Source: Octopus bimaculoides (taxonomy: Eukaryota). Taken from it: a stretch of 64,000 bases of DNA. The translations under genes and the position numbers were made by a program. A model generated the notes under the pieces. It had not been told where the DNA came from. It worked only from the letters and a program-made list of their open reading frames with translations, and ran no database searches. The stretch covers positions 12,916,239 through 12,980,238 of the forward strand of contig NC_068999.1 in assembly GCF_001194135.2 (NCBI RefSeq). Reading direction: 5' to 3'. This document shows, one piece after another, positions 3,212-60,439 of the stretch (positions are counted from its first letter, which is position 1; each line of letters starts with the position of its first letter).

Positions 3212-4560
3212 TAAAATGGATAGACAGAGATACACATACACATACAAAAACACACGCACACACACACAGGCATATATATATGTATATNNNNNNNNNNNNN
3301 NNNNNNNNNNNNNNNNNNNNNNNNNNNNNNNNNNNNNNNNNNNNNNNNNNNNNNNNNNNNNTATATAAATTTGTGTGTGTGTGTATACGTATATTTATTA
3401 GTTAAAGAATTCCTTCAGAACCTTATGATATCATTATTTTCCCCTTTCACAAAGAGTGGACAACGTAGTTTTAACACAGACTTAAACCTAGCAACTCAAT
3501 GTCTATAAAAAATAATAAACAAATTGTAACATGTTATTTCCTATTAGTATAATTTCCTGGAAGGAATTATTTGTCTGAGTGCAATTTCCTCTGCAACACT
3601 TATTTCCCCTTATTTGCTTTCCTGATTATGTGTTTGTACATATGCCTTTCCGTCAGTGCATATTTGGGATACACTATGTGTATGTGCTTATGCATGTGTC
3701 TATTGATAGAGGGGATATGCCTATGTAAGTATTAGTCTTTTTCTGGTTATATTATTCTATATTTGATTTTCATTTCCATCTATATTTTATTCTCAAGTAT
3801 TATGTTATTTGGTATAATTCCTATTTGAATATTTCCGTCCGTAAGACATTTATGAATGTATTGTGTATTATTTATAATATTATCGTCTTTCTACATTGCT
3901 ATTTCTCTATATTTTTTGTTTTTATATTCCCCACATATATCTCTTTGCTGTCTTATATAAAATCATATACTCCACAATATTCTAAGAACTTAAATAGAAT
4001 TATATTATTTATTTCTCCCCTGTATATGCAGTATTATAAATGTCTGGTTTGGTACGTTCTTGTGTTTGCCTTATTAATTCTATATGAATGCAATTTATGC
4101 ATCAAAGCTTCCGGCACATCATTTCGTTATTTTTTGATTGAGCGTGAAGTTTCATAAAACTAACACATATGTAAGACATATACAAACATACATACATGAA
4201 GTTGCTCTCTCAGATGCGCGTACACACGCGATGACATATACGCACGGGCCAACACACATGCGCGCGCACTCAAAGCACATAGGCATTTTGTGTAACAATA
4301 GTTGTGCTGAACATTGTATTAAAACTATTTTAAATATTTATTTTTAAGCATCGTTACACTTACACACATTCTATGCTAAAATTACTGAGAGAAAACTCAT
4401 CAAACGTACGGAGATATCAGGTAAATCTGATGAATTTTATGATATAACTTTTTTTTTTCGGGAACATTCGACGGCGTTCGAGAGCACAAAATGAACAATC
4501 GCAGTTGAGATGTTCGTTGACATAGAGGATAGGAAAGCGTTTGAATATTGTGATGGATGT

Positions 4561-4933
4561 TATTGTTGTTGTTGGCACTCCATCGCGGGTTCCAGTTGAT
4601 CCGATCAACGGAGCAGCCTGCTCGAGAAATTAATGTGCAAGTGGCTGAGCACTCCACAGACACGTGTAATCTTAACGTAGTTCTCGGGGATATTTAGCGT
4701 GACACAGTGTGACAAGGCTGACCCTTTGAATTACAGGCACACGAGAAAAACGAAGTAAGAGAAAGTTGTGGTGAAAGATTACAGCAGGGTTCGCCACCAT
4801 CCCCTGCTGGAGCTTCGTGGAGCTTTAGGTGTCTTCGCTCAATAAACACTCACAATGTCCGGTCTGGGAATCGAAACCGCGGTCCTTTGACCACGAGTCC
4901 GCTGCCCTAACCACTGGGCCATTGCGCCTCCAC
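4561..4933 (-). mobile_element. tRNA-derived SINE, near full length, with (AAC)n-like tail
   Basis: Minus-strand head gtggaggcgcaatggcccagtggttagggcagcggactcgtggtcaaaggaccgcggtttcgattcccagaccgg has Pol III A-box (TGGCCCAGTGG) and B-box (GGTTTCGATTCCC) motifs. It ends in aacaacaacaata. Confidence 0.8.
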
Positions 4934-4999
4934 TGTGAAGGATTTGCTTTACGTGCCAGAATGCCAAACTCATGACCGCTGCTCAATGCACTCTGAAAA

Positions 5000-5660
5000 T
5001 TATAAGGTTTGTGAGACGTGACAGGGTGTGCTGCAACAAGTGTACGAAACCCCGGCTAGCAAGAACTGGCATCAGCCTTCTGGCTGTATCCCCAAGCCAG
5101 AATTCATAAAACAACTACGAAACATGTCCTTAATGCTAGAATTCAGACGGCAACGTGAAGCTGCTGGATACTGTGTTGAATTCCTAGCTGGAAAGTTTTA
5201 TTACTCGACGTGCCTGGTATTAGGAATTCAGTTCCTTGTCAAACATTTGGAATGAGTCAACAGCGGTTTGTGTACGACGTCACCAGACACAGTTTCAGGC
5301 CTCGTAATCCCCACAATTATAGCCCTATGCCCATGGACTGCTCTGCGTGGGGAGTTGTTGAGAAAGACTTGAACCAATCGCACTACTTCCAACACCAAGT
5401 CGTACTCTTGGTACATAACACGTTGGTGTCCGAAAATGTTCAGATGGACACAATCTGGAAGGAAAGCACTAGGTTACCAGGGCCGTCTCTTCTGTTTCAT
5501 TGAAAGCTGAATGAGGATACTTTTAAATAAAATGCTATCGCCTAACATTATCTATTAAAATGTTTTTCATTTTTGAAAAAATACTTTGAATATTGGATGG
5601 GATATTTTCTTTTTTTGATTTTATTTCGTGCTAACTGTGAAATTCAACCTGAACTCTGTA
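5000..5660 (+). mobile_element. Decayed Tc1/mariner transposase C-terminal remnant
   Basis: 5255-5380 translates SQQRFVYDVTRHSFRPRNPHNYSPMPMDCSAWGVVEKDLN, resembling the WPPNSPDLNPMDY.VWG.VE motif around the third catalytic residue. The segment ends at ...ctgta-TA. Recognised by eye. Confidence 0.5.
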
Positions 5661-8368: not shown

Positions 8369-10924
8369 ACAACAGAATTCCATAATACTAGAAAAAACAC
8401 AGAATTTCCAAACAGTGCTTGTCTGAAACTCCCAAGAATCCGAACTCGCGTACACGAAGGATTTTCAAATACCCTGACCTAAATATTACCTACCAAAGAG
8501 CAGTAATAATAAGTTTGTATAATTTATACGCCTTCACACGCATTCCATTAATTTCATTCAGGGACGATATGGAGATAAATATAGAAATAATCGACATAGC
8601 AAGAAAGAACATATATTAACGTTCCATAGTAGAGAAAATAGAAGAAAGAAATAGCATTTTAAAACACATCGGAAACGGATTATTGCCTCCGTTACTTCTC
8701 AGCTGCAGGATAAAATTTCTGAAAACGACGTCAAATGAAATGTGAATTTTGTGGCAGGAAAATTAAATAACGTTTCAATAATTTCGTTCAACTCTTTCAT
8801 CGATATGCCAAGGAGCGCAGCTGTTAGTTTTGAGATAAAGAAAGAAAAAAATACTGTTTACTTTGAATCAGAGCTAAGAGAAAAGCTAATTAAAGGCAGA
8901 TCAACGAATGATATTTAAAATTTAATTTTCAGTTAGTGAGGTTTAAATAGCTTGGGTTTTCTCTTTCTTTTTCTTTTGTTCTATTCTTTTATCTTGATTA
9001 TTATTTTTTTCTGTTCTTTTCAATGTTTTCTATTCGCTTTATTTACACTATACTGAAAATTAGTAAGCGTAATGTGTGTGGAAATTAGCTGCACTCTTCT
9101 CTATGTCATAATTATGTTGATATATTGATACGTGCTTAACCAAACGCATACATACATATATACATGTACATATACACACACACTTATATATAATACACAC
9201 GCTGTATACACATACATACACATGCACATAGGCATATACGCATCAGACAAACATAGATATAGGTATACGCATTTGCACGAACATAGTGATACATATGCGA
9301 TGGAGTAAAATAACACTAATCAATTTCTGCTCTTCTACTATCACCTCTCATCCAGGAATTTGAACTTGAAATCGATAACGGTCACATCGATTAAAATGTG
9401 TAGCTCATCTACATTGTGTTGTATTTGTCTCATAAACTAGATCTAAATCGTTTGGTTTCATTACCGTTACACAAGTTAGAAATCAATGAGAAACATGTGT
9501 ATTTTTCGCTCACAATGTCATCTTAGTCAATTATTAGACTTTATCAATGGAAGTACATTTCCAATGCTAAATCCATATTAGACGGAATCGAGTTAATTTG
9601 ATTATTCGAAATATTTACTTCCTCAATCCGAGTTGTTAAAGATTAAACTTCTGCAAGTTTAAACAATATCAAAACTAATCCAAATAAAATTAACCTCTTA
9701 AGCACCCCTTCACAACATACTAGATCGTTTGTACTTTTACGTCAAATTTGAAAAGATGTTTCAGCAAATGTTGAGCGATCGTACACTGTGAATGCTTGTA
9801 CATACATATCTACGATTAAATAAGTAATGACGTATGTACTCTCCTCCATTTGTATATGCATGTATGTATGTATGTATATGTGTATATATATATATATATN
9901 NNNNNNNNNNNNNNNNNNNNNNNNNNNNNNNNNNNNNNNNNNNNNNNNNNNNNNNNNNNNNNNNNNNNNNNNNNNNNNNNNNNNNNNNNNNNNNNNNNNN
10001 NNNNNNNNNNNNNNNNNNNNNNNNNNNNNNNNNNNNNNNNNNNNNNNNNNNNNNNNNNNNNNNNNNNNNNNNNNNNNNNNNNNNNNNNNNNNNNNNNNNN
10101 NNNNNNNNNNNNNNNNNNNNNNNNNNNNNNNNNNNNNNNNNNNNNNNNNNNNNNNNNNNNNNNNNNNNNNNNNNNNNNNNNNNNNNNNNNNNNNNNNNNN
10201 NNNNNNNNNNNNNNNNNNNNNNNNNNNNNNNNNNNNNNNNNNNNNNNNNNNNNNNNNNNNNNNNNNNNNNNNNNNNNNNNNNNNNNNNNNNNNNNNNNNN
10301 NNNNNNNNNNNNNNNNNNNNNNNNNNNNNCGTGGAGGGTAGTGGCGGCCGGAAAAACAAGACAGGAAAACGAAACGGTGAATAAACAAACATGCAAAAAG
10401 GATGTACAGCCAGACGTGAAGTGTGTATGTATTGAACCCTGTGAAGCACGAACAGGAGGGACAAAGAAGTACGTGCGAGCTTCGGGAGTCCAATAACGAA
10501 AAGAAATAGCAGCCGAGAAAGAGAGAAAGATAGCCTAAATGCCAGCTGTTTCTCTAAATGTACATGCCTTATCATAACATGGAATATATTTTATATAATC
10601 TCTGTCTCTGAAGAATTTCCAACAAGTAATTCCATAAACATCTAACATGTATAGCAATGCGATTCTAATATCTATCTAACTACATATCAATTAGCAAATG
10701 AAACACTTGTAACTGTGAATCGATAATGCCAAAAACTTGTAACTTCCTATATAGCACATAAAAAAGTAAAAATGCCAGTGGAAATTTCGAGATATGCTGT
10801 AGGATCGGTGTATTATTTGGCTAACCTTTACACTTTGAAATGAAAAATGACATGGGAAACTAGGCTTACATTTTGGAATAGAGATTTCTTCAGACGCTGG
10901 CCATTAATTAGAGAAAACAACAAG

Positions 10925-10930
10925 GACTGT

Positions 10931-10961
<31 letters not shown>

Positions 10962-11075
10962 GGTACTGCTGCTGCTGCTGCTGGTAGTGGTCGTGGTGGT
11001 GGTGCTACTACTGCTACTACTATTACCACCACTACCAGTATTACTACCTCTACTACAACAACCAACAGCACCACC
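10925..11075. repeat. Compound trinucleotide microsatellite (TAC/TGC/TGG)
   Basis: Direct inspection; it produces the poly-S/T tail of the 10908-11219 ORF. Confidence 0.9.
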
Positions 11076-11084
11076 GGAAACGAC

Positions 11085-11915
11085 ACCATCCTGTTTTACC
11101 ATCGTCTCTTTCTTTGCAACGAGGCGTTGTTTCAGTTCCTGCATTGCCACTTTCATACCCTCTCTGTCAATATCATACTTCCTGTTCAGTGCCATGTATT
11201 TTTGTTCGCTGTTAAGCACCCCATTCCCTTTTCATCCTAATACAGAAGTGTCCTTGAAGAGCATATCTAACCCCGCCTGTATTTTTCTCTTCTACCATGG
11301 AACTTTTATTTTATGACTCCTTTTTTTGTTTTACTTCAACAGCCACATATTCTGCTACATAAATAATTGTTGCCTCGATCAAATTCTTTGTTACTGTCAT
11401 GTTTTTTTGGTACTATGTATTTCAGAATTTCATTCACATTTTTTCATTTCTTGGTTTAAGTTCTACAGATCAACCTTTTTTAGTTTGCAAAAAAATGTCG
11501 TTATCGTTCTCCTGTAACCCTGACTTTATTCTGTCGTAGGTTGCGTTTTGCCCATCTGCCATGTCACCATTAATTTTATTGTCTTATTCCAAACCATCTA
11601 TATGTCTATCATCGAGCAAGTTATCACTGTTCCTTTCCTTTGGTTTATTAGAATTGTCACCTCTGATTTCTGCTATCAGAGTAATTTTATCAGTAGGAAC
11701 TGTATTTTCATCGACTCCTCTGTTGCTGATTCCCAATACCAGTCTTTTGATAGATTTGAGCTCTACTTCTTTGAGCCAACAATTTTTTCTAATTGCTCTA
11801 GCTATTGATCATATTATCTCTGTTGCGTGAGCTGAAACCATCCTCTTTCACTCCATTGATCCTACATACGGTGTCCGTATCCATTAGGATGATCACCATT
11901 TTCGTCTACAGGTTA
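11085..11915 (-). mobile_element. R4/Dong-like non-LTR retrotransposon, N-terminal ORF region, decayed
   Basis: Across frameshifts and stops the minus strand reads PVDENGDHPNGYGHRM*DQWSERGWFQLTQQR, ARAIRKNCWLKEVELKSIKR, PW*KRKIQAGLDML and LNRKYDIDREGMKVAMQELKQRLVAK. These motifs are typical of the pre-RT region of R4/Dong (RLE) elements. Confidence 0.75.
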
Positions 11916-14419: not shown

Positions 14420-14880
14420 TTGGGAATCGGTGACGACACCTGTTCACCGTTTACGTAGAATATATCGCTGTGCCGCAGCTTCGGATCATGTCTGTGTGTA
14501 GAGAGTGTTGGCAGCAGAAGGACCGCATCACTAATGAAACCTGACACCTCCACAGGATTTTAAAGAAGCAGCGTTCAAAATTGGCGTGGCACGATCGGGG
14601 ACAAGTTATGACGGTCAAGCGATAGTAGAGGACGAACGCGATGTAGGCATTCGTCACCTCCACTTGACCTTTCAGTGATAGCTTACTCCCAGCATATTTC
14701 TGCGTGAAACTGGCTACCCTGCTCGTCACCTCATCCCAATTCATATCAACCTGGAGGTTTCATTCGTACCCGAAGTTACTTAACTGGTCACTCAGTCCAG
14801 GGCACCACGTACTGCCAAAATACTGCCTGAATTTACCTGGAATTATACTTAAGGGCATATAGCTTCACAGATGTACGAAC
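14420..14880 (-). mobile_element. L1/Tx1-like LINE reverse-transcriptase C-terminal fragment
   Basis: ORF 14451-14744: NWDEVTSRVASFTQKYAGSKLSLKGQVEVTNAYIAFVLYYRLTVITCP...FFKILWRCQVSLVMRSFCCQH, resembling the W..R.LSL.GR..V...I.....Y post-RT region of L1/Tx1 elements. Confidence 0.75.
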
Positions 14881-20042: not shown

Positions 20043-20485
20043 ATTGAACCAAGATACTAGAAATGTGAATGAAATTCTGAAATAAATCAGATCAAAAAAC
20101 ATCATAGAAAAAAATAATTTGATCAAGGCACCAAGTATTATTGTAGCAGAAAATGTCGCTGTTGATTTCAAGAAAAAGAAATATAATGCGAGTGACACAA
20201 GAAGGATACATGTGGAAAAGAAAAATACAGGCGGCGTTAAATATGCTCTCGAAGGACAATCCCGTGTTAGACAGAAAAGAGAAAGTTTGTGCTTAATAGC
20301 GAATAAAAATACAGGGCATTGAACAGGAAGTATGATATTGAAAGAAAGGGTTTGAAAATGGCAATGGTGGAACTGAAACTGTGTCCCGTTGCAAAGAAAG
20401 CAAAGAGGGCAAGATTCGACCAAAGAATGAATGGAAAGCAGCAGGGTAGGTTATTCAGAGTAGATCAGAAATTATTCTACTAAGA
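20043..20485 (+). mobile_element. R4/Dong-like element fragment (same region as the 11085-11480 copy, opposite strand)
   Basis: aatgtgaatgaaattctgaaata and agaaaaatacaggcggcgttaaatatgctctc match the minus strand of 11250-11450. Translation includes GLKMAMVELKLCPVAKKAKRARFDQR..QGRLFRVDQKLFY. Confidence 0.75.
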
Positions 20486-20510
20486 AAATTAATAGAGAGT
20501 GTACATTAAT

Positions 20511-21575
20511 TAATGGAGATACGTAGATGACTTTTTTTATCATTTGGAAGGATACCATTGATAAAGTTGTGGTATTCAAATCAACACTAAATAATATAAT
20601 CAGTACCATTCAATTCTCAATGGAATATAGCAAAGAACAACTTCCATTTTTGCATATTATGATAAAAAAGTCAACAAATTATACTGATATTTACCATGAA
20701 CCAAGGGACTCGAAACAATATCAGCTTTTTAGCACTTTGCACCCGCAACACATCAACATCGATATCCCCTTTAATTTGACAAAAAGGATTTGCACAATAG
20801 TGTCTAATAGAACAACTAGAGACCTTCGTCTTGAAGACCTCAGAACAACACTAACTGAAAGACAATATTCACCCTTACTTTTAGACGATGGAATTAAGCG
20901 TGTCAAGAAATTACATAGAAAAAAAAACACTAAAGAAAACAAAACATAAGACGACACCTCACCTCAATAAACTACTGTATATATCAACTCACAACCCTAG
21001 AAACAATGAGACATGTAACAGTATTGTGTAAAATCTCCCTTTACTAAATAGAGACCCAGCAATGAACAACATCCTGAAAGCACATGAATTCATCAAATGC
21101 AAAATACAAAAGAAATCACTAAAGTAACTTCTAACTAATGCGACACTTTACAAAAGAACCACGAAATCAACGGTAAGAAAACGTGGACATCGAAACTGTG
21201 CAACATGCCCCAATCTTTCTGAAGGCTGGGATTTCCTTTTCAAACAAGGAGAGAGATTCACAATTAAAACAAAACCAACTTCACTTGTGCCTCTGAGAAC
21301 GTAATTACTGTAATAACTTGCTTGGGTTCTAGATATTGCTACCTTGGACAGACGAGTATGACGTTGAGATGGCGAACTACTCCTCTAAATAAAGAGCAGA
21401 TCCGATTCCAGCAATACAGACTGATTCCACTCACTGAACACATAGAGATATGTGCAGGTAACATCAAACAAAATTTCACAGAAGTCCCCTTCTACTAGTG
21501 CAAAGATAACATTTTTCTACAAGAACGCTAAAATAAAGAAATGTTATTCATCAAGAAATACAGAACACATTGAAA
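20511..21575 (+). mobile_element. Penelope-like element (RT C-terminus plus GIY-YIG endonuclease), decayed
   Basis: WRYVDD at 20514-20531, then IQFSMEYSKEQLPFLHI..TDIYHEPRDSKQY..IPFNLTKRICTIVS; endonuclease region NFTCASENV/VITCLGSRYCYLGQTSMTLRWR and IPLTEHIEICA..EMLFIKKY. Confidence 0.85.
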
Positions 21576-21712
21576 TGTACATGACATAGCCAACTGTGAT
21601 CTTTAATACATATTTAAATTCACAATTACTTACCCATCACTGTATATTTTTCTCCACAATACTCTAGTTTTTGAGTTTTTGTCTATACACACACGCACAC
21701 GAAACCACACCC

Positions 21713-43325: not shown

Positions 43326-44779
43326 AAATAATAGAACTATCTATCTATCTATCTATATATCTATCTATCTATCTATCTAACTATCTATCTATCTATTAAT
43401 TAAATCTGCCATGTGTTAACATGTACCGACGTTCATTTAATCAAGATATCCTTGGACCCCAGAATAGCATGTAGAATACACCTCGCTATAATTTTATAAT
43501 TTTAAACTCTGCATGCCATTGTATTCCGTTAAATAACTTCCTACAGTTTTGTTTTCTAGGATATTTGAAATATTTCAATATAACTTCAGATTCTGCTAAA
43601 CAGTTTCTCTTTAAATCTTTTTACTTTGCCTGTAATATTTTGGTTATAGGAAATATATTTGCCTCGGATCTTGTGGAGATTTATACATATAATAGCTGAT
43701 ATTAAATTATGTTGGATTCATTTGTTTTATTCATATTGTTTTTATTCATTGTTTTAGTTCTGAAATTACACACACTATTTACATTGCCTCCAGACAGAAA
43801 GAAAATATTTTATGTATGTTTCTGAACCAGTTACTGTTTCCTTTTTGCGTAATATTTAATTGTTCCCATTCAACAGTTTGTGTTTCATAATGCAGTTAAC
43901 GTGCTATGCAAAGCGTTTTCTATTTCAAGAAATCACTCGGAGAATACAGTTCCTCTGCGTAACATCGATGCATCACATTGTGACTGAAATTAGTCAATTA
44001 ACCAATAGAACATTACACTGTGTAATATATGATGAATATATAAAATGAATATTCAATGAAAGTAGCAAATCAAGCGAGAACCTATAAAACTCGTAACAAA
44101 AATCACAAACCATTATGTCTGACGTTCTGACAATACTGGTAAACCATTTTCAAATTAAAAGGAGAAAACAATGTAACCACGCCATGCAAGCCTTTAGAGA
44201 TGGTACCAAAAAGCCCATGAGTCAACACGTATTTATTTTAAATTATGCATATTTTAAAATGTATTACGACCCACTCACAAACATTCATAGGCACATATAC
44301 ACATATACACATATACACATGTACACAAATATATTGATGTCTTATGAAGCGTCTTCGTTCATATGTGACCTGACGATTTTCGAAATTCTTCGTTGTTCTT
44401 TATATGTTGTACAATTTAAACAGTGCTAACTGAACGAAAATCGATTAAAGAAAAAACGCATTTGTTTTTAAGCAATGCTTGAATGGACTGCTCAAAATAT
44501 TTTCGGCCCAAACAAAACAAATATTTCTCTATTATATATATGTAGAGGAGTCAGACATTACTTCAAAACACCAACACGATTGAAAACAAAATCAGAGGAA
44601 AAAGAGATTACATTTTATTACAACACATTTCTCTGAATTCTCTGAGATAGAAAGAGAGGATTCTGATTTTTTAAAATAATCTTACCATTGCTCTTATTGA
44701 CATTGAAATAATCTTACCATTTCTATCATCGAAATTGAGACACTGGGGAGTACCAGCGACTGAAATACTCCAGGGATAG

Positions 44780-45740
44780 AAAAGGTCCCCAATTTCTGGT
44801 TGGAACACCCCATGAGTACTCACAATCACTTAGTGGTAGCGTTCAATTTATTGATATGTGAACCAGATTCTACCCCAGACTGGATGCTGGAAGAGCAAAC
44901 CATCCTAATTCCAAACGAAGGAAGTCACTGTACACCCACCAAATTAAAGACGAATAATATGGCTATCAACATACTACAAAACACTTGCATCATTCATCTA
45001 TAACCGGCTTATAAATCACCTGGAAAATAACAATGTCATACACAAAGAAGAAAAAGGGTGCCTCAGAGGGATGTATGGTTGTAAGGAGCCACATCTGATA
45101 AACTGAGCAATTATAGAATGTAAGAGGAAAAAGACGAATCTGAAAACGACTTGGATTGATTACCAGAAGGCATTCGACAGTGTTTCACACTCATGGGTAC
45201 TCGAATCTGCCCACACAAATAAGGTAGCCTCACCAATACTAAAGTATATCAAACATGCAATAGCATGTATAACACTAAAAGTATAACACTAAAAATGACT
45301 CACAAGGTATTAAGATATAGCCTATACCCATAATAAGACGACTTTTCGAGGGAGAATCACCGGTCACTCCTCTTTTTCTGTCTTTCTCTGACCCCGCTCA
45401 CAAACTTGCTAAACGAAATCACCATAGACTATAGATGCTACGGGCAAAAATACATTACCTATACATGGATGACTTTAAACCTTAGCTAAGTGCACCATGG
45501 AAGAGAGAAACCTCATCAAAGTGGTTCGGATTTCCAGGAATAATGTCTGAATGAGCATGGGCCACACTAAGAAGAGACAAATTATTCAACACTGAAAACT
45601 CTGCAATCGTCATAAACAGAAAACTTAGAGAATTACATCACAACCGCCCATACAAATTTCTAGGAATAGACAAACCAGCTAAAATACAACACACAGAAAT
45701 GAAAAAGAAAATTAGGAGAGGATATTACAGAAGAGTTAGG
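44780..45740 (+). mobile_element. R4/Dong-like reverse-transcriptase domain, decayed
   Basis: PGIEKVPNFWLEH, PDWMLEEQTILIP, EKGCLRGMYGCKEPHLIN, TWIDYQKAFDSVSHSWV, FCLSLTPL, YMDD (45462-45473), YKFLGI, EMKKKIRRGYYRRVR; several stops and frameshifts. Confidence 0.85.
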
Positions 45741-45754
45741 CTACACTGTTTACG

Positions 45755-45815
45755 TTACTTACATTTGACGGCTATTTTTCCTCATCTTGCTTGTTCTTAA
45801 CATAACGTTTCGGTT
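45755..45815 (-). repeat. Hammerhead-family repeat (as 3066), truncated copy 2
   Basis: Same body as 3066-3116; only GAAAC GTT ATGTT of the ribozyme remains. Confidence 0.7.
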
Positions 45816-55712: not shown

Positions 55713-56558
55713 AAATAATGTATAAAGAACGTACATGATTACTCATCTCTTAAATATAGAACTCTATACATATAATGTTTCACATAATATCGAAAGATAA
55801 TTGTATATAAGGATAGTATTGTTTATAAAAATATCAGTGGCTTAGAATTCGTAAAAAAAACATAAAGCTAAAATTATCAATTCATAGTTAAGGGCACTAT
55901 AGGCCGTGCGAGCATGCTCCAATAGCAGTAAATTGACCGAACTGCAAGTTTTCACTTAAACACAAAGGTGAAGACGGGCCAAAAAGAACTAAACAATTAA
56001 TATCCCGTACCAATAATGAGAATAGACGAAAATAGAGAAAGTCAGACATACGCGTATCACCGTACTTTCGAACTTTATTTAGTCCCCACCAGGTCTTATA
56101 TATATACATAATGTAATATATATATATACGTATATATATATATATATATATATATNNNNNNNNNNNNNNNNNNNNNNNNNNNNNNNNNNNNNNNNNNNNN
56201 NNNNNNNNNNNNNNNNNNNNNNNNNNNNNNNNNNNNNNNNNNNNNNNNNNNNNNNNNNNNNNNNNNNNNNNNNNNNNNNNNNNNNNNNNNNNNNNNNNNN
56301 NNNNNNNNNNNNNNNNNNNNNNNNNNNNNNNNNNNNNNNNNNNNNNNNNNNNNNNNNNNNNNNNNNNNNNNNNNNNNNNNNNNNNNNNNNNNNNNNNNNN
56401 NNNNNNNNNNNNNNNNNNNNNNNNNNNNNNNNNNNNNNNNNNNNNNNNNNNNNNNNNNNNNNNNNNNNNNNNNNNNNNNNNNNNNNNNNNNNNNNNNNNN
56501 NNNNNNNNNNNNNNNNNNNNNNNNNNNNNNNNNNNNNNNNNNNNNTATACATATGTAT

Positions 56559-56655
56559 ATAGGAAAATGAAAAAAAGCCAGAATGCTGAACTGGAAGCAT
56601 ATTTTATTAAAATATGCTTCCAGTTCAGCATTCTGGCTTTTTTTTATTTTCCTAT
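56559..56655. repeat. 97-bp near-perfect hairpin (possible MITE)
   Basis: 47-bp arms at 56559-56605 and 56609-56655 with 1 mismatch and a 3-nt spacer. Confidence 0.95.
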
Positions 56656-56929: not shown

Positions 56930-57200
56930 ATATTCTAATATGGATAGTACCAGGGCTATATAATATAAAGTGTCCATGAAGACTACTGCACTACCTTTGT
57001 CGGCCACTTTGATAGAAATTGTGTTATCATGTTTTAATCTGTTCATCTCAGCCGATTCTTTTTTGCTGAAGTTTGCTTTGAATTTCTATTTATGTATAAG
57101 CTGACATGGGTAATTCGTGATGTGTTCACAGAAACGGTCAAGAATGGTGTCCTTACCTTTTGACAGAATGCTGTTACTTTTATTCTAGACTAACGAGACA
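56930..57200 (-). mobile_element. Penelope-like element, N-terminal RT fragment
   Basis: SKGKDTILDRFC..KANFSKKESAEMNRLKHDNTISIKVADKGSAVVFMD contains the PLE I.I..ADKG.AVV.MD motif. Confidence 0.8.
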
Positions 57201-57234: not shown

Positions 57235-57945
57235 CAGGATCTACCCAGAATCACTAATTGATATAGGCTTTCAACTCAATATCCACGAACTCAGAAACCA
57301 CAAACTAAAGAAGGATTTACAGCCAAAAGCCTTACCATACATATCTACACACAAACCCCTTCGACACCATCCTCTACAGCATATCTTTCCTAAAATGGCC
57401 CTATAGAATTTATCACATCTTGAAAATACACACCATCGTACAGAGCAAAAGACAACCAAACTCAATGACAAATCTTCTAACACAGGCCAACAACATCGTA
57501 ACCGACATGAACAAAATACAGAAGACCTAACTATGGTATATGTAACAACCTAATAAAGGGATCGGAATTCTCTTTCAAGCTGGGCCAACGTTTCACAGTC
57601 AAAAACAACTTCACATGTGCTTCGGAAAACCCAATATATGTATTAACTTGCTGAGGGTGACAAGAACAATATATTTTTTTCGGAACCCTTCTCCACTTCG
57701 GTCTTCGAAGGTCTCGTTCGAATGTTTGCTACTACCACCGAGATCTACACCCGCGGTCGGCTTCACCCGGGCTCGCGCCCGCGGCCTCCGTGCACGCCGC
57801 GGCGCCCTCCTACTCGACCGGGCATCGGAAAGTCACCTCGCCGGCGATCGCGCAACCTGTCGCTCGGCCGGTCCGGCATCGGTCGCTCGCTTCAGCGCCA
57901 TTGGTCAAACTAAAAGCAGTTTACGTCAGAGGATGACGGTACATA
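57235..57945 (+). mobile_element. Penelope-like element, linker plus GIY-YIG endonuclease, split by a 28S insertion
   Basis: YPESLIDIG, LPYISTHKP, IVQSKRQPNSMTNLLTQA, GICNNLIKGSEFSFKLGQRFTVKNNFTCASENPIYVLTC*G*QEQYI [insert] IGQTKSSLRQRMTVH; homologous to 21000-21380. Confidence 0.85.
57681..57901 (-). rRNA. 28S: 28S (LSU) rRNA fragment, retroposed and non-functional
   Basis: Reverse complement of the conserved LSU segment ATGGCGCT...GAGTAGGAGGG...AGATCTCGGTGGTAGTAGCAAACATTCGAACGAGACCTTCGAAGACCGAAGTGGAGAAGGGTTCC. It is GC-rich in an AT-rich context and has A7 at its 3' end. Confidence 0.92.
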
Positions 57946-60439
57946 CATCATCATCATTATCATCCTCATCATCATCATCATCATCATCCTCACCATCATC
58001 CTCATCATCATCATCATCATCAACATCATCATCTTCTTCATCTTCTCTTTCTTCTTCTTCTTCTTCTTCTTCTTCTTCTTCTTCTTCTTCTTCTTCTTCT
58101 TCTTCTTCTTCTTCTTCTTCTTCTTCTTCTTCNNNNNNNNNNNNNNNNNNNNNNNNNNNNNNNNNNNNNNNNNNNNNNNNNNNNNNNNNNNNNNNNNNNN
58201 NNNNNNNNNNNNNNNNNNNNNNNNNNNNNNNNNNNNNNNNNNNNNNNNNNNNNNNNNNNNNNNNNNNNNNNNNNNNNNNNNNNNNNNNNNNNNNNNNNNN
58301 NNNNNNNNNNNNNNNNNNNNNNNNNNNNNNNNNNNNNNNNNNNNNNNNNNNNNNNNNNNNNNNNNNNNNNNNNNNNNNNNNNNNNNNNNNNNNNNNNNNN
58401 NNNNNNNNNNNNNNNNNNNNNNNNNNNNNNNNNNNNNNNNNNNNNNNNNNNNNNNNNNNNNNNNNNNNNNNNNNNNNNNNNNNNNNNNNNNNNNNNNNNN
58501 NNNNNNNNNNNNNNNNNNNNNNNNNNNNNNNNNNNNNNNNNNNNNNNNNNNNNNNNNNNNNNNNNNNNNNNNNNNNNNNNNNNNNNNNNNNNNNNNNNNN
58601 NNNNNNNNNNNNNNNNNNNNNNNNNNNNNNNNNNNNNNNNNNNNNNNNNNNNNNNNNNNNNNNNNNNNNNNNNNNNNNNNNNNNNNNNNNNNNNNNNNNN
58701 NNNNNNNNNNNNNNNNNNNNNNNNNNNNNNNNNNNNNNNNNNNNNNNNNNNNNNNNNNNNNNNNNNNNNNNNNNNNNNNNNNNNNNNNNNNNNNNNNNNN
58801 NNNNNNNNNNNNNNNNNNNNNNNNNNNNNNNNNNNNNNNNNNNNNNNNNNNNNNNNNNNNNNNNNNNNNNNNNNNNNNNNNNNNNNNNNNNNNNNNNNNN
58901 NNNNNNNNNNNNNNNNNNNNNNNNNNNNNNNNNNNNNNNNNNNNNNNNNNNNNNNNNNNNNNNNNNNNNNNNNNNNNNNNNNNNNNNNNNNNNNNNNNNN
59001 NNNNNNNNNNNNNNNNNNNNNNNNNNNNNNNNNNNNNNNNNNNNNATGTGTGTGTGTGGGTGGGTGTGTGTGTGTGTGTATGTATGTGTGTGTGTGTGTA
59101 CACATAACGTCCTCTTCATGGTGAAAATTTGGTATAAACAAAACAGTTAACTTTTGCTTGAATAATTGAAAACGATGCATATTAATAAAATTCCCATGTT
59201 AAAAATATTCTGTTATTTATCCATATATGCCAAAACAGTCACATTTATCAAAGCATTACTATGATTTAATAGGTAACTATTAGAAAATATACCCTCTTAC
59301 CAACATAATGTTCTTGTATATTTTATGTGTGCTATAAATATAACGGATTACGTTGAATAAACAAGTAACACTATTATCGCTAATTATTTTATCGACCAGG
59401 GAATATATAACGTTAACTACCCAAGGATTTAATGGCAGATGTTCAGTGATACGTTCCTAAATCAGACACCGCTCTATTTCGTCTGGCTAATACTATTTCA
59501 GACACGTTGCGTCTACAGAGACTTGATAATAGAGAAATAATAGTAGCCAGTGCTTGTTGAGGTGTAATTTGTTTCATTATGTTGATTTGTTTTTCGATAA
59601 AAAGCAAACGCTGTACTTTGCCTTATTCTTCCTAAGTAATGAACAACAGTAATATATAACATACTTAGGGAATAGCCATAATGCAGTCAATGTACCTATC
59701 AACCTAAATGTACATTGTTAGAAATACATCAAAATATATCCGACCAATTTACTGATTAATAACTTAAAACATCACATAGTGAAAGGCGTTCTAAATCTAG
59801 GGACGGCAGAGTGTCTTAGAATGTTCATATCTGAAAGGGAGTTTAGTAGTATTGTATTAGCCATGCTAACTAAAGCTAAGTAAATATTTAAAAAGTGTGG
59901 CACCACAGATTGCGCATTTGATTTTGGTTTATAGAAATTGTGACACATAAAATTATTCACTTACTTAAATCTGTTTTCTTCTTAATAAATTAAGGGGTTG
60001 AATTTTATGCTAATCGTCCCCTAAGATATTGTAAATGTGTGATGCAACGGAGTATACGACTTATATATGTATACTAGAAAGATTATCAAGTGCATTTGAT
60101 AAAAACATCCGTAATTTATATATATTATATGATATTAGTGAGACATTTGATATGTTTTAATAGGTAATGAGAAATAACACTACCCAACATTTACTACATG
60201 TAATATATTAATAAACATGATTAACGTTGTGTAATGAAGATTGAATGCAAATAAATTCTCTTGTTTATATATAACAGTGTTACATTAATGAATACGAATT
60301 ACATAATATAGGAATTGTATAATATAAATATCTACAGTAAAATTTTCAGAGACTGAAGATTACTTGTGTATACCGTCTGTAGTCCTGAGACTACTTCTTC
60401 ACACCGAAAACATGAATTTCTATCTGGATATTGATTTCA

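What the first reader, a model, noticed from the sequence alone, without database searches (positions are those of the whole stretch)
57664..57945. A-tailed 28S rRNA fragment inserted exactly into the YIG motif of a Penelope GIY-YIG endonuclease
Seen in sequence: removing 57676-57902 restores gaa caa tat att ggt caa act (EQYIGQT) and continues KSSLRQRMTVH. ATT is present on both sides (57673-75 and 57900-02). The insert is antisense 28S ending ...GAAGGGTTCCG-A7 at one end, and its other end (ATGGCGC) overlaps the flank by 2 nt. Established: A-tail, short duplication and 5' microhomology are hallmarks of target-primed reverse transcription, and polyadenylated rRNA decay intermediates exist. Inference: a polyadenylated LSU fragment ending just upstream of the D7 (hidden-break) region was captured in trans by a retroelement RT and disrupted this endonuclease. 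Alternatively, this rRNA-PLE chimera is itself a repeated family, like a 28S-derived SINE.
Basis: partly seen in the sequence, partly recalled or inferred. Interest (0 to 1): 0.75.

Follow-up and report, generated by a model that had tools for sequence, protein, structure and literature searches.

The report
A-tailed 28S fragment in dead retrotransposon
A 220-base piece of large-subunit ribosomal RNA carrying a short added A-tail was copied back into DNA and landed inside an already dead fragment of a Penelope-like retrotransposon; this is a real but ordinary processed rRNA pseudogene.

Summary
Window 57681-57899 (219 nt, up to 57901) is antisense eukaryotic LSU rRNA (Rfam RF02543, 94 bits, model positions about 1322-1512). 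At its rRNA 3' end sit 5-7 A's. These are not templated in two real 28S genes that share its unusual GC-shifted core. Removing 57676-57902 restores EQYIGQTKSSLRQRMTVH. That sequence aligns without a gap to the GIY-YIG domain of intact RT+GIY-YIG Penelope-like proteins (56% identity, E 1e-12) and to a paralogous copy at 20.5-21.6 kb.

RNA-mediated, A-tail-primed insertion is the best explanation.
- The "ATT duplication" is not significant. Two of its three bases are 28S sequence, so the duplication is 0-3 bp.
- The link to the hidden break is not supported. The fragment ends more than 40 nt upstream of D7a.
- The "disrupted endonuclease" was a 5'-truncated copy that carries stop codons.
- The SINE-like family idea could not be tested. 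There is one copy in 64 kb.

28S retropseudogenes, 28S/LINE-1 chimeras and SINE28 are already known in mammals, so this is a new member of a known kind. Interest is low.

The parts
57681..57899 (-). Unambiguous 28S (LSU) rRNA-derived segment, 219 nt. In rRNA sense on the minus strand it reads GGCGCTGAAGCG...GGAGAAGGGTTCCG. It covers LSU model positions about 1324-1512 (D6/ES15 region plus the conserved core upstream of D7a).
   Evidence: Rfam RF02543 at 94.2 bits, E 5e-23. It is 85% identical overall, and 93% over the 3' 147 nt, to the real rDNA contigs L001 and L002. A G-C for A-U compensatory pair in helix UUCGAA/UUCGAA is shared with L001 and L002.
57900..57901 (-). AT dinucleotide that can be assigned either to the 28S fragment (ATGGCGC) or to the target codon ATT. 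This is a 2-nt microhomology at the rRNA 5' junction.
   Evidence: The 28S relatives read GGATGGCGCT and the window reads CCAATGGCGCT.
57676..57680 (-). Untemplated A5 (T5 on the + strand) directly after the rRNA 3' end. Together with the T's at 57674-57675 it forms the run of 7.
   Evidence: It is absent from the Penelope-like homologues and the paralog. It is also absent from the 28S relatives, which continue TGCCAACGG after GGGTTCCG.
57673..57675 (+). Left ATT (Ile codon of YIG). It is a possible copy of a 0-3 bp target-site duplication, the other copy being 57900-57902.
   Evidence: Read directly from the sequence. It is not statistically meaningful.
57336..57675 (+). Upstream flank. This is a degraded Penelope-like element, covering the linker plus the GIY half of the GIY-YIG endonuclease (about residues 541-658 of a 745-aa element). 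It has frameshifts and two in-frame TGA codons (57652-54 and 57658-60).
   Evidence: tblastn of intact RT+GIY-YIG proteins against the window, translations and Pfam architecture of the homologues.
57903..57945 (+). Downstream flank, GQTKSSLRQRMTVH. This is the YIG half of the endonuclease core.
   Evidence: Translation. BLASTP of the joined flanks against P0017 gives E 1e-12.
57946..58132 (.). (CAT)n/(CTT)n microsatellite that replaces the rest of the endonuclease. A 913-N assembly gap follows (58133-59045).
56936..57196 (-). Inverted fragment of the N-terminal (DKG-motif) region of a Penelope-like element, about residues 64-151. It lies next to the 5'-truncated copy.
   Evidence: tblastn and the translation IKVADKGSAVVFMD.
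20536..21594 (+). Paralogous 5'-truncated Penelope-like copy (about residues 395-753) with an uninterrupted C..YLGQT. It serves as an 'empty-site' comparator within the window.
   Evidence: Its 140-aa ORF has 2097 homologues in the representative-protein search.

Best explanation
This is a processed (retro-)pseudogene of a 28S rRNA fragment.

Proposed sequence of events:
1. An internal piece of large-subunit rRNA about 220 nt long acquired a short non-templated oligo(A) tail. Such tails mark rRNA decay intermediates.
2. A non-LTR retrotransposon reverse transcriptase acting in trans copied it into DNA.
3. Priming came from a nick in the + strand after ...TATATT, whose terminal T's paired with the tail.
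4. The cDNA end was joined to the other side of the break through a 2-nt (AT) microhomology, with a duplication of at most 3 bp.

The target was an AT-rich spot in a copy of a Penelope-like element that was already non-functional (5'-truncated). That the spot falls within the YIG codons is a coincidence.

Shown:
- The identity and exact ends of the rRNA piece.
- The untemplated A-run.
- Precise restoration of the element's reading frame when the insert is removed.
- The dead state of the host copy.

Inferred:
- The RNA intermediate.
- The source of the tail.
- The identity of the reverse transcriptase.
- That the rRNA is the host's own.
For: - The Rfam LSU match has sharp ends.
- The alignment to real rDNA (L001, L002) shows that the homology ends at GGGTTCCG and that the following A's are not encoded.
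- The fragment is internal to the 28S and has no adjoining rDNA on either side.
- The joined flanks match intact Penelope-like GIY-YIG domains with no gap. The paralog is uninterrupted.
- Two junctions flanking one point of the element cannot come from a single chimeric join.
- The insert keeps a compensatory G-C pair and 93% identity to functional relatives in the conserved block. Its CpG o/e is 1.45. It was therefore copied from a functional-type rRNA and has not decayed much.
- The same window holds degraded LINE reverse-transcriptase remnants and an A10-tailed tRNA-like SINE. A-tailed retroposition therefore occurs in this genome.
- Polyadenylated 28S fragments exist in cells (PMC1474067).
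- 28S pseudogenes made by LINE-1 target-primed reverse transcription are known in primates (10.1101/2025.02.02.635956).
Against: - The tail is short (5-7 A).
- There is no convincing target-site duplication (0-3 bp).
- The nick site TATT/GG is only loosely like known LINE endonuclease sites.
- The host's own 28S could not be obtained. Non-templating of the A-run and host origin therefore rest on two distant relatives and the Rfam consensus.
- No partner LINE with a poly(A) tail was identified.
Confidence: 0.65

Rival explanations
1. Endonuclease-independent capture at a double-strand break. An rRNA fragment or its cDNA was used as filler during end-joining repair of a random break in the dead Penelope-like copy, without a retrotransposon nick.
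For: The duplication is 0-3 bp, the junction has a 2-nt microhomology, the tail is very short, and the target does not fit a LINE endonuclease consensus. All of these are typical of repair-associated insertions.
Against: The A-run still needs an RNA with an added tail and a reverse transcriptase. This is therefore a variant of the main model rather than an opposite. The available data cannot separate the two.
Confidence: 0.18
2. The 28S piece plus tail, or the whole 28S-Penelope chimera, is one member of a repeated, mobilised family such as an rRNA-derived SINE.
For: rRNA-derived SINEs exist (SINE28, PMC4994717). An A-tailed SINE lies in the same window.
Against: There is only one copy in 64 kb. 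The fragment is internal to the 28S (model 1322-1512 of 3401), not the 3' end used by SINE28. No LINE-derived 3' module lies between the rRNA and the A's. Junction and tail patterns were absent from viral contigs, and the exact-ORF look-ups of the junctions found nothing.
Confidence: 0.07
3. DNA-level insertion of an rDNA fragment, such as extrachromosomal rDNA debris, with the A-run being random filler.
For: The tail is short and no clear duplication is present.
Against: Five identical filler bases placed exactly at the end corresponding to the RNA 3' side are unlikely. An RNA with an oligo(A) tail explains the polarity.
Confidence: 0.05
4. Assembly artefact. The 28S piece was spliced into the contig by the assembler or by a chimeric library molecule.
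For: This is a draft assembly with 15 N-gaps in 64 kb. The 1.6-kb contig carrying the insert begins with a near-perfect 48-nt-arm palindrome.
Against: Both junctions fall at the same codon boundary of the element and restore its frame exactly. The junction overlaps (2-7 nt) are far below any assembler k-mer. The A-run is a biological signature.
Confidence: 0.04

Closest known systems
28S/LSU rRNA processed pseudogenes of mammals (LSU-rRNA fragments inserted by LINE-1 target-primed reverse transcription)
   Same: An internal 28S fragment a few hundred nt long sits outside the rDNA array, has an A-tail at the rRNA 3' end, and is 5'-truncated with junction microhomology (10.1101/2025.02.02.635956).
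   Different: The host is an AT-rich invertebrate-type genome whose Penelope-like relatives are closest to oyster proteins. The tail is only 5-7 A. There is no 7-15 bp duplication. The acting reverse transcriptase is unknown.
[quoted passage not shown]
   Same: An rRNA fragment of similar size (median 269 nt) is mobilised by a LINE machinery.
   Different: Those chimeras carry a LINE-1 3' segment between the rRNA and the poly(A). Here the A-run follows the rRNA directly.
SINE28 (LSU-derived SINE of mammals)
   Same: It is a 28S-derived sequence dispersed by retroposition (PMC4994717).
   Different: [quoted passage not shown] This fragment is internal (model 1322-1512 of 3401) and is single-copy in the data available.
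Polyadenylated rRNA decay intermediates
   Same: These are truncated 28S molecules with short non-templated A-rich tails (PMC1474067), which is the presumed template here.
   Different: Those are RNAs observed in human cells. Here only a DNA footprint is seen, in an unidentified host.
Canonical EN+ Penelope-like elements (Neptune/Nematis-type, C-terminal GIY-YIG)
   Same: The flanks match the linker and GIY-YIG core of RT+GIY-YIG proteins. The paralog matches the RT C-terminal region.
   Different: The copy that was hit is a truncated, inverted-adjacent, stop-containing remnant. No hammerhead ribozyme or pLTR was detected.

Membership tests
Eukaryotic LSU rRNA (Rfam RF02543) | Sequence plus secondary-structure match to the covariance model above the gathering score | tested here: met
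   94.2 bits against a gathering score of 50, E 5e-23, model positions about 1322-1512 aligned at high posterior. The default-filter whole-window run did not report it.
Eukaryotic LSU rRNA (Rfam RF02543) | Helices maintained by compensatory changes, meaning the fragment was copied from a functional rRNA | tested here: met
   The helix reads UUCGAA...UUCGAA where the consensus reads uUCaAa...uUuGAa, an A-U to G-C double change. The genuine rDNA contigs L001 and L002 share it.
Processed pseudogene made by target-primed reverse transcription | Non-templated A-tail at the 3' end of the copied RNA | tested here: met
   The A5-7 follows GGGTTCCG. The 28S relatives and the Rfam consensus continue UGCC/gugu instead. 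The host's own 28S was not available.
Processed pseudogene made by target-primed reverse transcription | Target-site duplication flanking the insert | tested here: inconclusive
   ATT is present on both sides, but AT of the right copy is 28S sequence. The duplication is 0-3 bp, which is chance level.
Processed pseudogene made by target-primed reverse transcription | Insertion at the partner LINE's endonuclease nick motif | not testable with these tools
   The inferred nick is TATATT/GG. No intact LINE or set of sibling insertions was available to define a motif.
Processed pseudogene made by target-primed reverse transcription | Precise empty site, with flanks contiguous in unoccupied relatives | tested here: met
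   The joined flanks align to P0017 without a gap across QYIGQT (E 1e-12). The paralog at 21.3 kb reads YLGQT uninterrupted. A true orthologous or allelic empty site was not available.
EN+ Penelope-like element | C-terminal GIY-YIG endonuclease with two Cys between GIY and YIG (CCHH motif) | tested here: inconclusive
   The sequence PIYVLTC*G*QEQYIGQT aligns to LIYVLNCNGCNSAQYIGQT. The Pfam GIY-YIG hit is 18 bits, below the 22.6 cut-off. The second Cys is now TGA, and the domain is cut off after 14 more residues.
EN+ Penelope-like element | Penelope-type reverse transcriptase upstream of the endonuclease in one ORF | tested here: not met
   The focal copy starts at about residue 541 and has no RT. 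The feature is met for the family: the paralog's RT C-terminal ORF has 2097 homologues, and full-length ones carry RVT_1 plus GIY-YIG. The focal sequence is therefore a fragment of such an element, not an element.
EN+ Penelope-like element | pLTR with hammerhead ribozyme | tested here: not met
   No hammerhead match was found at gathering or E<=1 thresholds around either copy. The flanks are cut by assembly gaps.
SINE28-type rRNA-derived SINE | [quoted passage not shown] | tested here: not met
   The fragment is internal (model 1322-1512 of 3401). There is a single copy in the window. Copy number in the genome and transcription are not testable here.
28S-alpha 3' end generated by the hidden break | Fragment end coincides with the D7a break region | tested here: not met
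   The end lies at GGGUUCCG. At least 41 nt of conserved core follow in L001 before D7a. The break lies in the D7a loop (PMC6925239).
28S/LINE chimeric retrocopy | LINE 3' segment between the rRNA part and the poly(A) | tested here: not met
   The A-run abuts the rRNA directly.

The most novel reading that the evidence does not exclude
The insert is one footprint of a recurrent process. In this reading, oligoadenylated decay intermediates of the 28S-alpha half are trimmed back from the hidden break to a preferred stop at GGGUUCCG and are repeatedly captured by a retrotransposon reverse transcriptase in this lineage. That would give a dispersed set of 28S fragments with a common 3' end, a nascent rRNA-derived SINE-like family. 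A second variant is that the unusually GC-shifted rRNA is not the host's own.
Probability: 0.06. Interest if true: 0.55.

Novelty: new member of a known kind. Interest (0 to 1): 0.2.

Why it matters
It is a clean single-locus example outside mammals showing that an internal, oligoadenylated fragment of ribosomal RNA can be reverse-transcribed into the germline genome. Its exact ends are defined, and a within-window paralog serves as an 'empty-site' comparator. By itself it changes nothing in the field, because rRNA retropseudogenes are known and the gene it interrupts was already dead. Its practical value is as an annotation caveat (rRNA-like sequence outside rDNA, inside a transposon) and as a seed for a genome-wide count of A-tailed rRNA fragments.

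Tried and rejected
- Exact-ORF look-ups of both junction-spanning ORFs and of the paralog ORF found no other contig.
- Three word-indexed protein searches found nothing. The queries were the joined Penelope flank and two antisense frames of the rRNA insert. The host's rDNA and organism could therefore not be recovered that way.
- The exact 48-nt 28S core was absent from metagenome contigs. A degenerate version found only L001 and L002.
- A D6-specific 26-mer and the core pattern were absent from bacterial and archaeal genome contigs.
- The tail junction was absent from viral contigs.
- Folding the insert alone was uninformative (z = +0.64).
- Pfam on ten candidate ORFs elsewhere in the window gave nothing useful.
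- Template switching during the element's own reverse transcription was considered and rejected. The rRNA is antisense to the element, and the element sequence resumes at the exact same codon.
- A link to 28S-specific LINEs (R1/R2-type) was considered and rejected, because the A-run lies on the rRNA 3' side.
- The host identity (possibly a mollusc, judging from oyster-like Penelope relatives and a tRNA-like SINE) remains a guess and was not used as evidence.

Full report
**What is there.**
The + strand reads ...GAA CAA TAT ATT | TTTTT CGGAACCCTTCTCC ... CTTCAGCGCC ATT | GGT CAA ACT AAA AGC.... cmscan against Rfam places the minus strand of this stretch in the eukaryotic LSU rRNA model (RF02543) at 94.2 bits, E 5e-23. 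Confident alignment runs from AUGGCGCU (model about 1322) to GGGUUCC (model about 1512). This covers the D6/ES15 region and the conserved core that precedes D7a. The default-filter whole-window scan did not report it. No other 28S-like sequence exists in the 64 kb. The insert is 67% GC with CpG o/e 1.45, set in a 34% GC flank.

**Exact ends.**
The conserved core of the insert differs from the Rfam consensus only by AT-to-GC changes. One of these is a double, compensatory change in the helix UUCGAA/UUCGAA.

A degenerate pattern of this core found just two contigs among the metagenome records, L001 and L002 (the exact core found none). L001 is a bona fide rDNA unit (LSU at 730 bits). In both contigs ATGGCGCT is preceded by GAAAATGG, and GGGTTCCG is followed by TGCCAACGGCGG.

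In the three-way alignment, homology with the window begins at ATGGCGCT and ends at GGGTTCCG. Identity is 85% overall and 93% over the last 147 nt. Three conclusions follow:
- The G after TTCC is templated.
- The following A-run is not templated. There are 5 A's that neither rRNA nor target explains, and 7 if the target's two T's are counted.
- The AT at 57900-57901 can be either rRNA or target, giving a 2-nt microhomology.

**The target.**
The flanks translate to FTCASENPIYVLTC*G*QEQYI and GQTKSSLRQRMTVH. Joined, they match residues 637-678 of P0017 at 24/43 identities, E 1e-12, with QYIGQT contiguous. They also give a sub-threshold Pfam GIY-YIG hit (18 bits).

P0017 and its relatives were found by searching the window's own 140-aa ORF at 20527-20946 against 1.84 billion representative proteins. 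That search gave 2097 hits. Full-length relatives of 612-753 aa carry RVT_1 plus a C-terminal GIY-YIG domain, and their sequences show an N-terminal DKG motif. This is the canonical EN+ Penelope-like architecture (PMC8557442). The closest named relatives are oyster proteins.

tblastn maps three Penelope-derived pieces in the window:
- A 5'-truncated copy at 20536-21594.
- The focal piece at 57336-57675 plus 57903-57945, covering about residues 541-678.
- An inverted N-terminal piece at 56936-57196.

The copy at 20.5 kb reads TAC CTT GGA CAG ACG (YLGQT) without interruption. It acts as an empty-site comparator. No hammerhead ribozyme was detected near either copy.

The focal piece was never a working endonuclease gene:
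- It lacks the reverse transcriptase.
- It has frameshifts and two TGA stops just upstream of the insert.
- It runs into a (CAT)n/(CTT)n microsatellite and an assembly gap 14 codons downstream.

**Mechanism.**
An internal rRNA fragment with a non-encoded A-run at its 3' end, inserted cleanly into unrelated DNA, is the footprint of reverse transcription of an oligoadenylated RNA.

The polarity fits target-primed reverse transcription:
1. A nick in the + strand after ...TATATT gives a T-ended primer that pairs with the tail.
2. cDNA synthesis then produces TTTTT-CGGAACCC... on the + strand.
3. The cDNA end ...GCGCCAT joins the downstream side through the AT microhomology.

Several observations make this plausible:
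- Truncated, polyadenylated 28S molecules exist in cells (PMC1474067).
- 28S pseudogenes made by LINE-1, as well as 28S/LINE-1 chimeras, are described in primates (10.1101/2025.02.02.635956).
- The window contains degraded LINE reverse-transcriptase sequence at about 44.7-45.8 kb, among other places.
- The window also holds a tRNA-like SINE ending in A10 at 4449-4945. A-tailed retroposition therefore occurs in this genome.

What is not shown is which enzyme acted, and whether a retrotransposon endonuclease made the nick or a pre-existing break was used. The tiny or absent duplication and the microhomology fit the latter as well.

Template switching during the Penelope element's own replication is unlikely, for two reasons. 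The rRNA is antisense to the element, and the element resumes at the same codon.

**Artefact?**
The assembly is a gapped draft, with 15 N-runs in 64 kb. The 1.6-kb contig begins with a 48-nt-arm palindrome. Even so, two junctions at the same codon boundary, restoring the frame exactly and with overlaps of only 2-7 nt, cannot arise from a chimeric join.

Exact-ORF look-ups of the junctions returned nothing.

- Hidden break: the break lies in the D7a loop (PMC6925239). The fragment ends at least 41 nt of conserved sequence upstream of it, so the end is not the 28S-alpha terminus.
- SINE-like family: SINE28 comes from the LSU 3' end and is multi-copy (PMC4994717). This piece is internal and single in the window, but the genome itself could not be searched.
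- Host origin of the rRNA: unproven. All attempts to recover the host's rDNA or identity failed.

**Verdict.**
It is overstated on the duplication, the hidden break and the functional consequence. The thing itself is a processed 28S rRNA pseudogene in a dead transposon fragment. That makes it a new member of a known kind and of low general interest.

Noticed in passing
window 4449-4945 (minus strand): SINE-like element with a tRNA-like head (GGCCCAGTGGTTAGGG...GGTTTCGATTCCC) ending in A10 (T10 at 4449-4458 on the + strand). There is one copy in the window. ARAGORN and Rfam are silent on it. It shows that A-tailed retroposons exist in this genome.
   Followed up: partly
window 5180-5500 (+): The ORF fragment ...PRNPHNYSPMPMDCSAWGVVEKD... 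resembles the C-terminus of a Tc1/mariner-type transposase. There is no Pfam hit at E<=0.1.
   Followed up: partly
window ~44700-45800 (+); also 10911-11231 (-), 14454-14759 (-), 20086-20500 (+): Degraded non-LTR (LINE) reverse-transcriptase remnants with the motifs WIDYQKAFDSV, YMDDFK and YKFLGI. The clade and tail type were not determined. Pfam was silent on the three pieces from the 44-45.8 kb region that were tried, on 10911-11231 (only a sub-threshold unrelated hit) and on 14454-14759. The piece at 20086-20500 was not scanned.
   Followed up: partly
window 56559-56606 / 56608-56655: Near-perfect palindrome (48-nt arms, 98% complementary, 1-nt spacer) at the very start of the contig that follows the N-gap at 56156-56545. 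It is either a foldback element or an assembly artefact. It gives many sub-threshold miRNA-family hits on both strands.
   Followed up: partly
window 57652-57654 and 57658-57660: [quoted passage not shown] The second sits where intact Penelope-like proteins have the second Cys of the CCHH motif. UGA-for-Cys selenoprotein coding is reported for Naiad elements (PMC8557442), but here decay of a dead copy is far more likely.
   Followed up: no
window 56936-57196 (-) next to 57336-57945 (+): An inverted N-terminal (DKG) fragment of a Penelope-like element lies directly upstream of the 5'-truncated C-terminal fragment, with about 390 residues missing between them. This is reminiscent of an inversion/deletion formed at integration.
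   Followed up: partly
L001 1835-1878, L002 40-83; window 57681-57740: The GC-shifted 28S core (UUCGAACGAGACCUUCGAA, then GGGUUCCG) is rare. Only two of 241 million metagenome records matched a degenerate pattern. The lineage carrying it could not be named.
   Followed up: partly
whole window: There are 15 runs of N (6265 bases), most of them bordered by (TA)n, (CA)n or trinucleotide microsatellites. Overall GC is about 30%. No tRNA gene was found, and Rfam gave no match at gathering score.
   Followed up: yes
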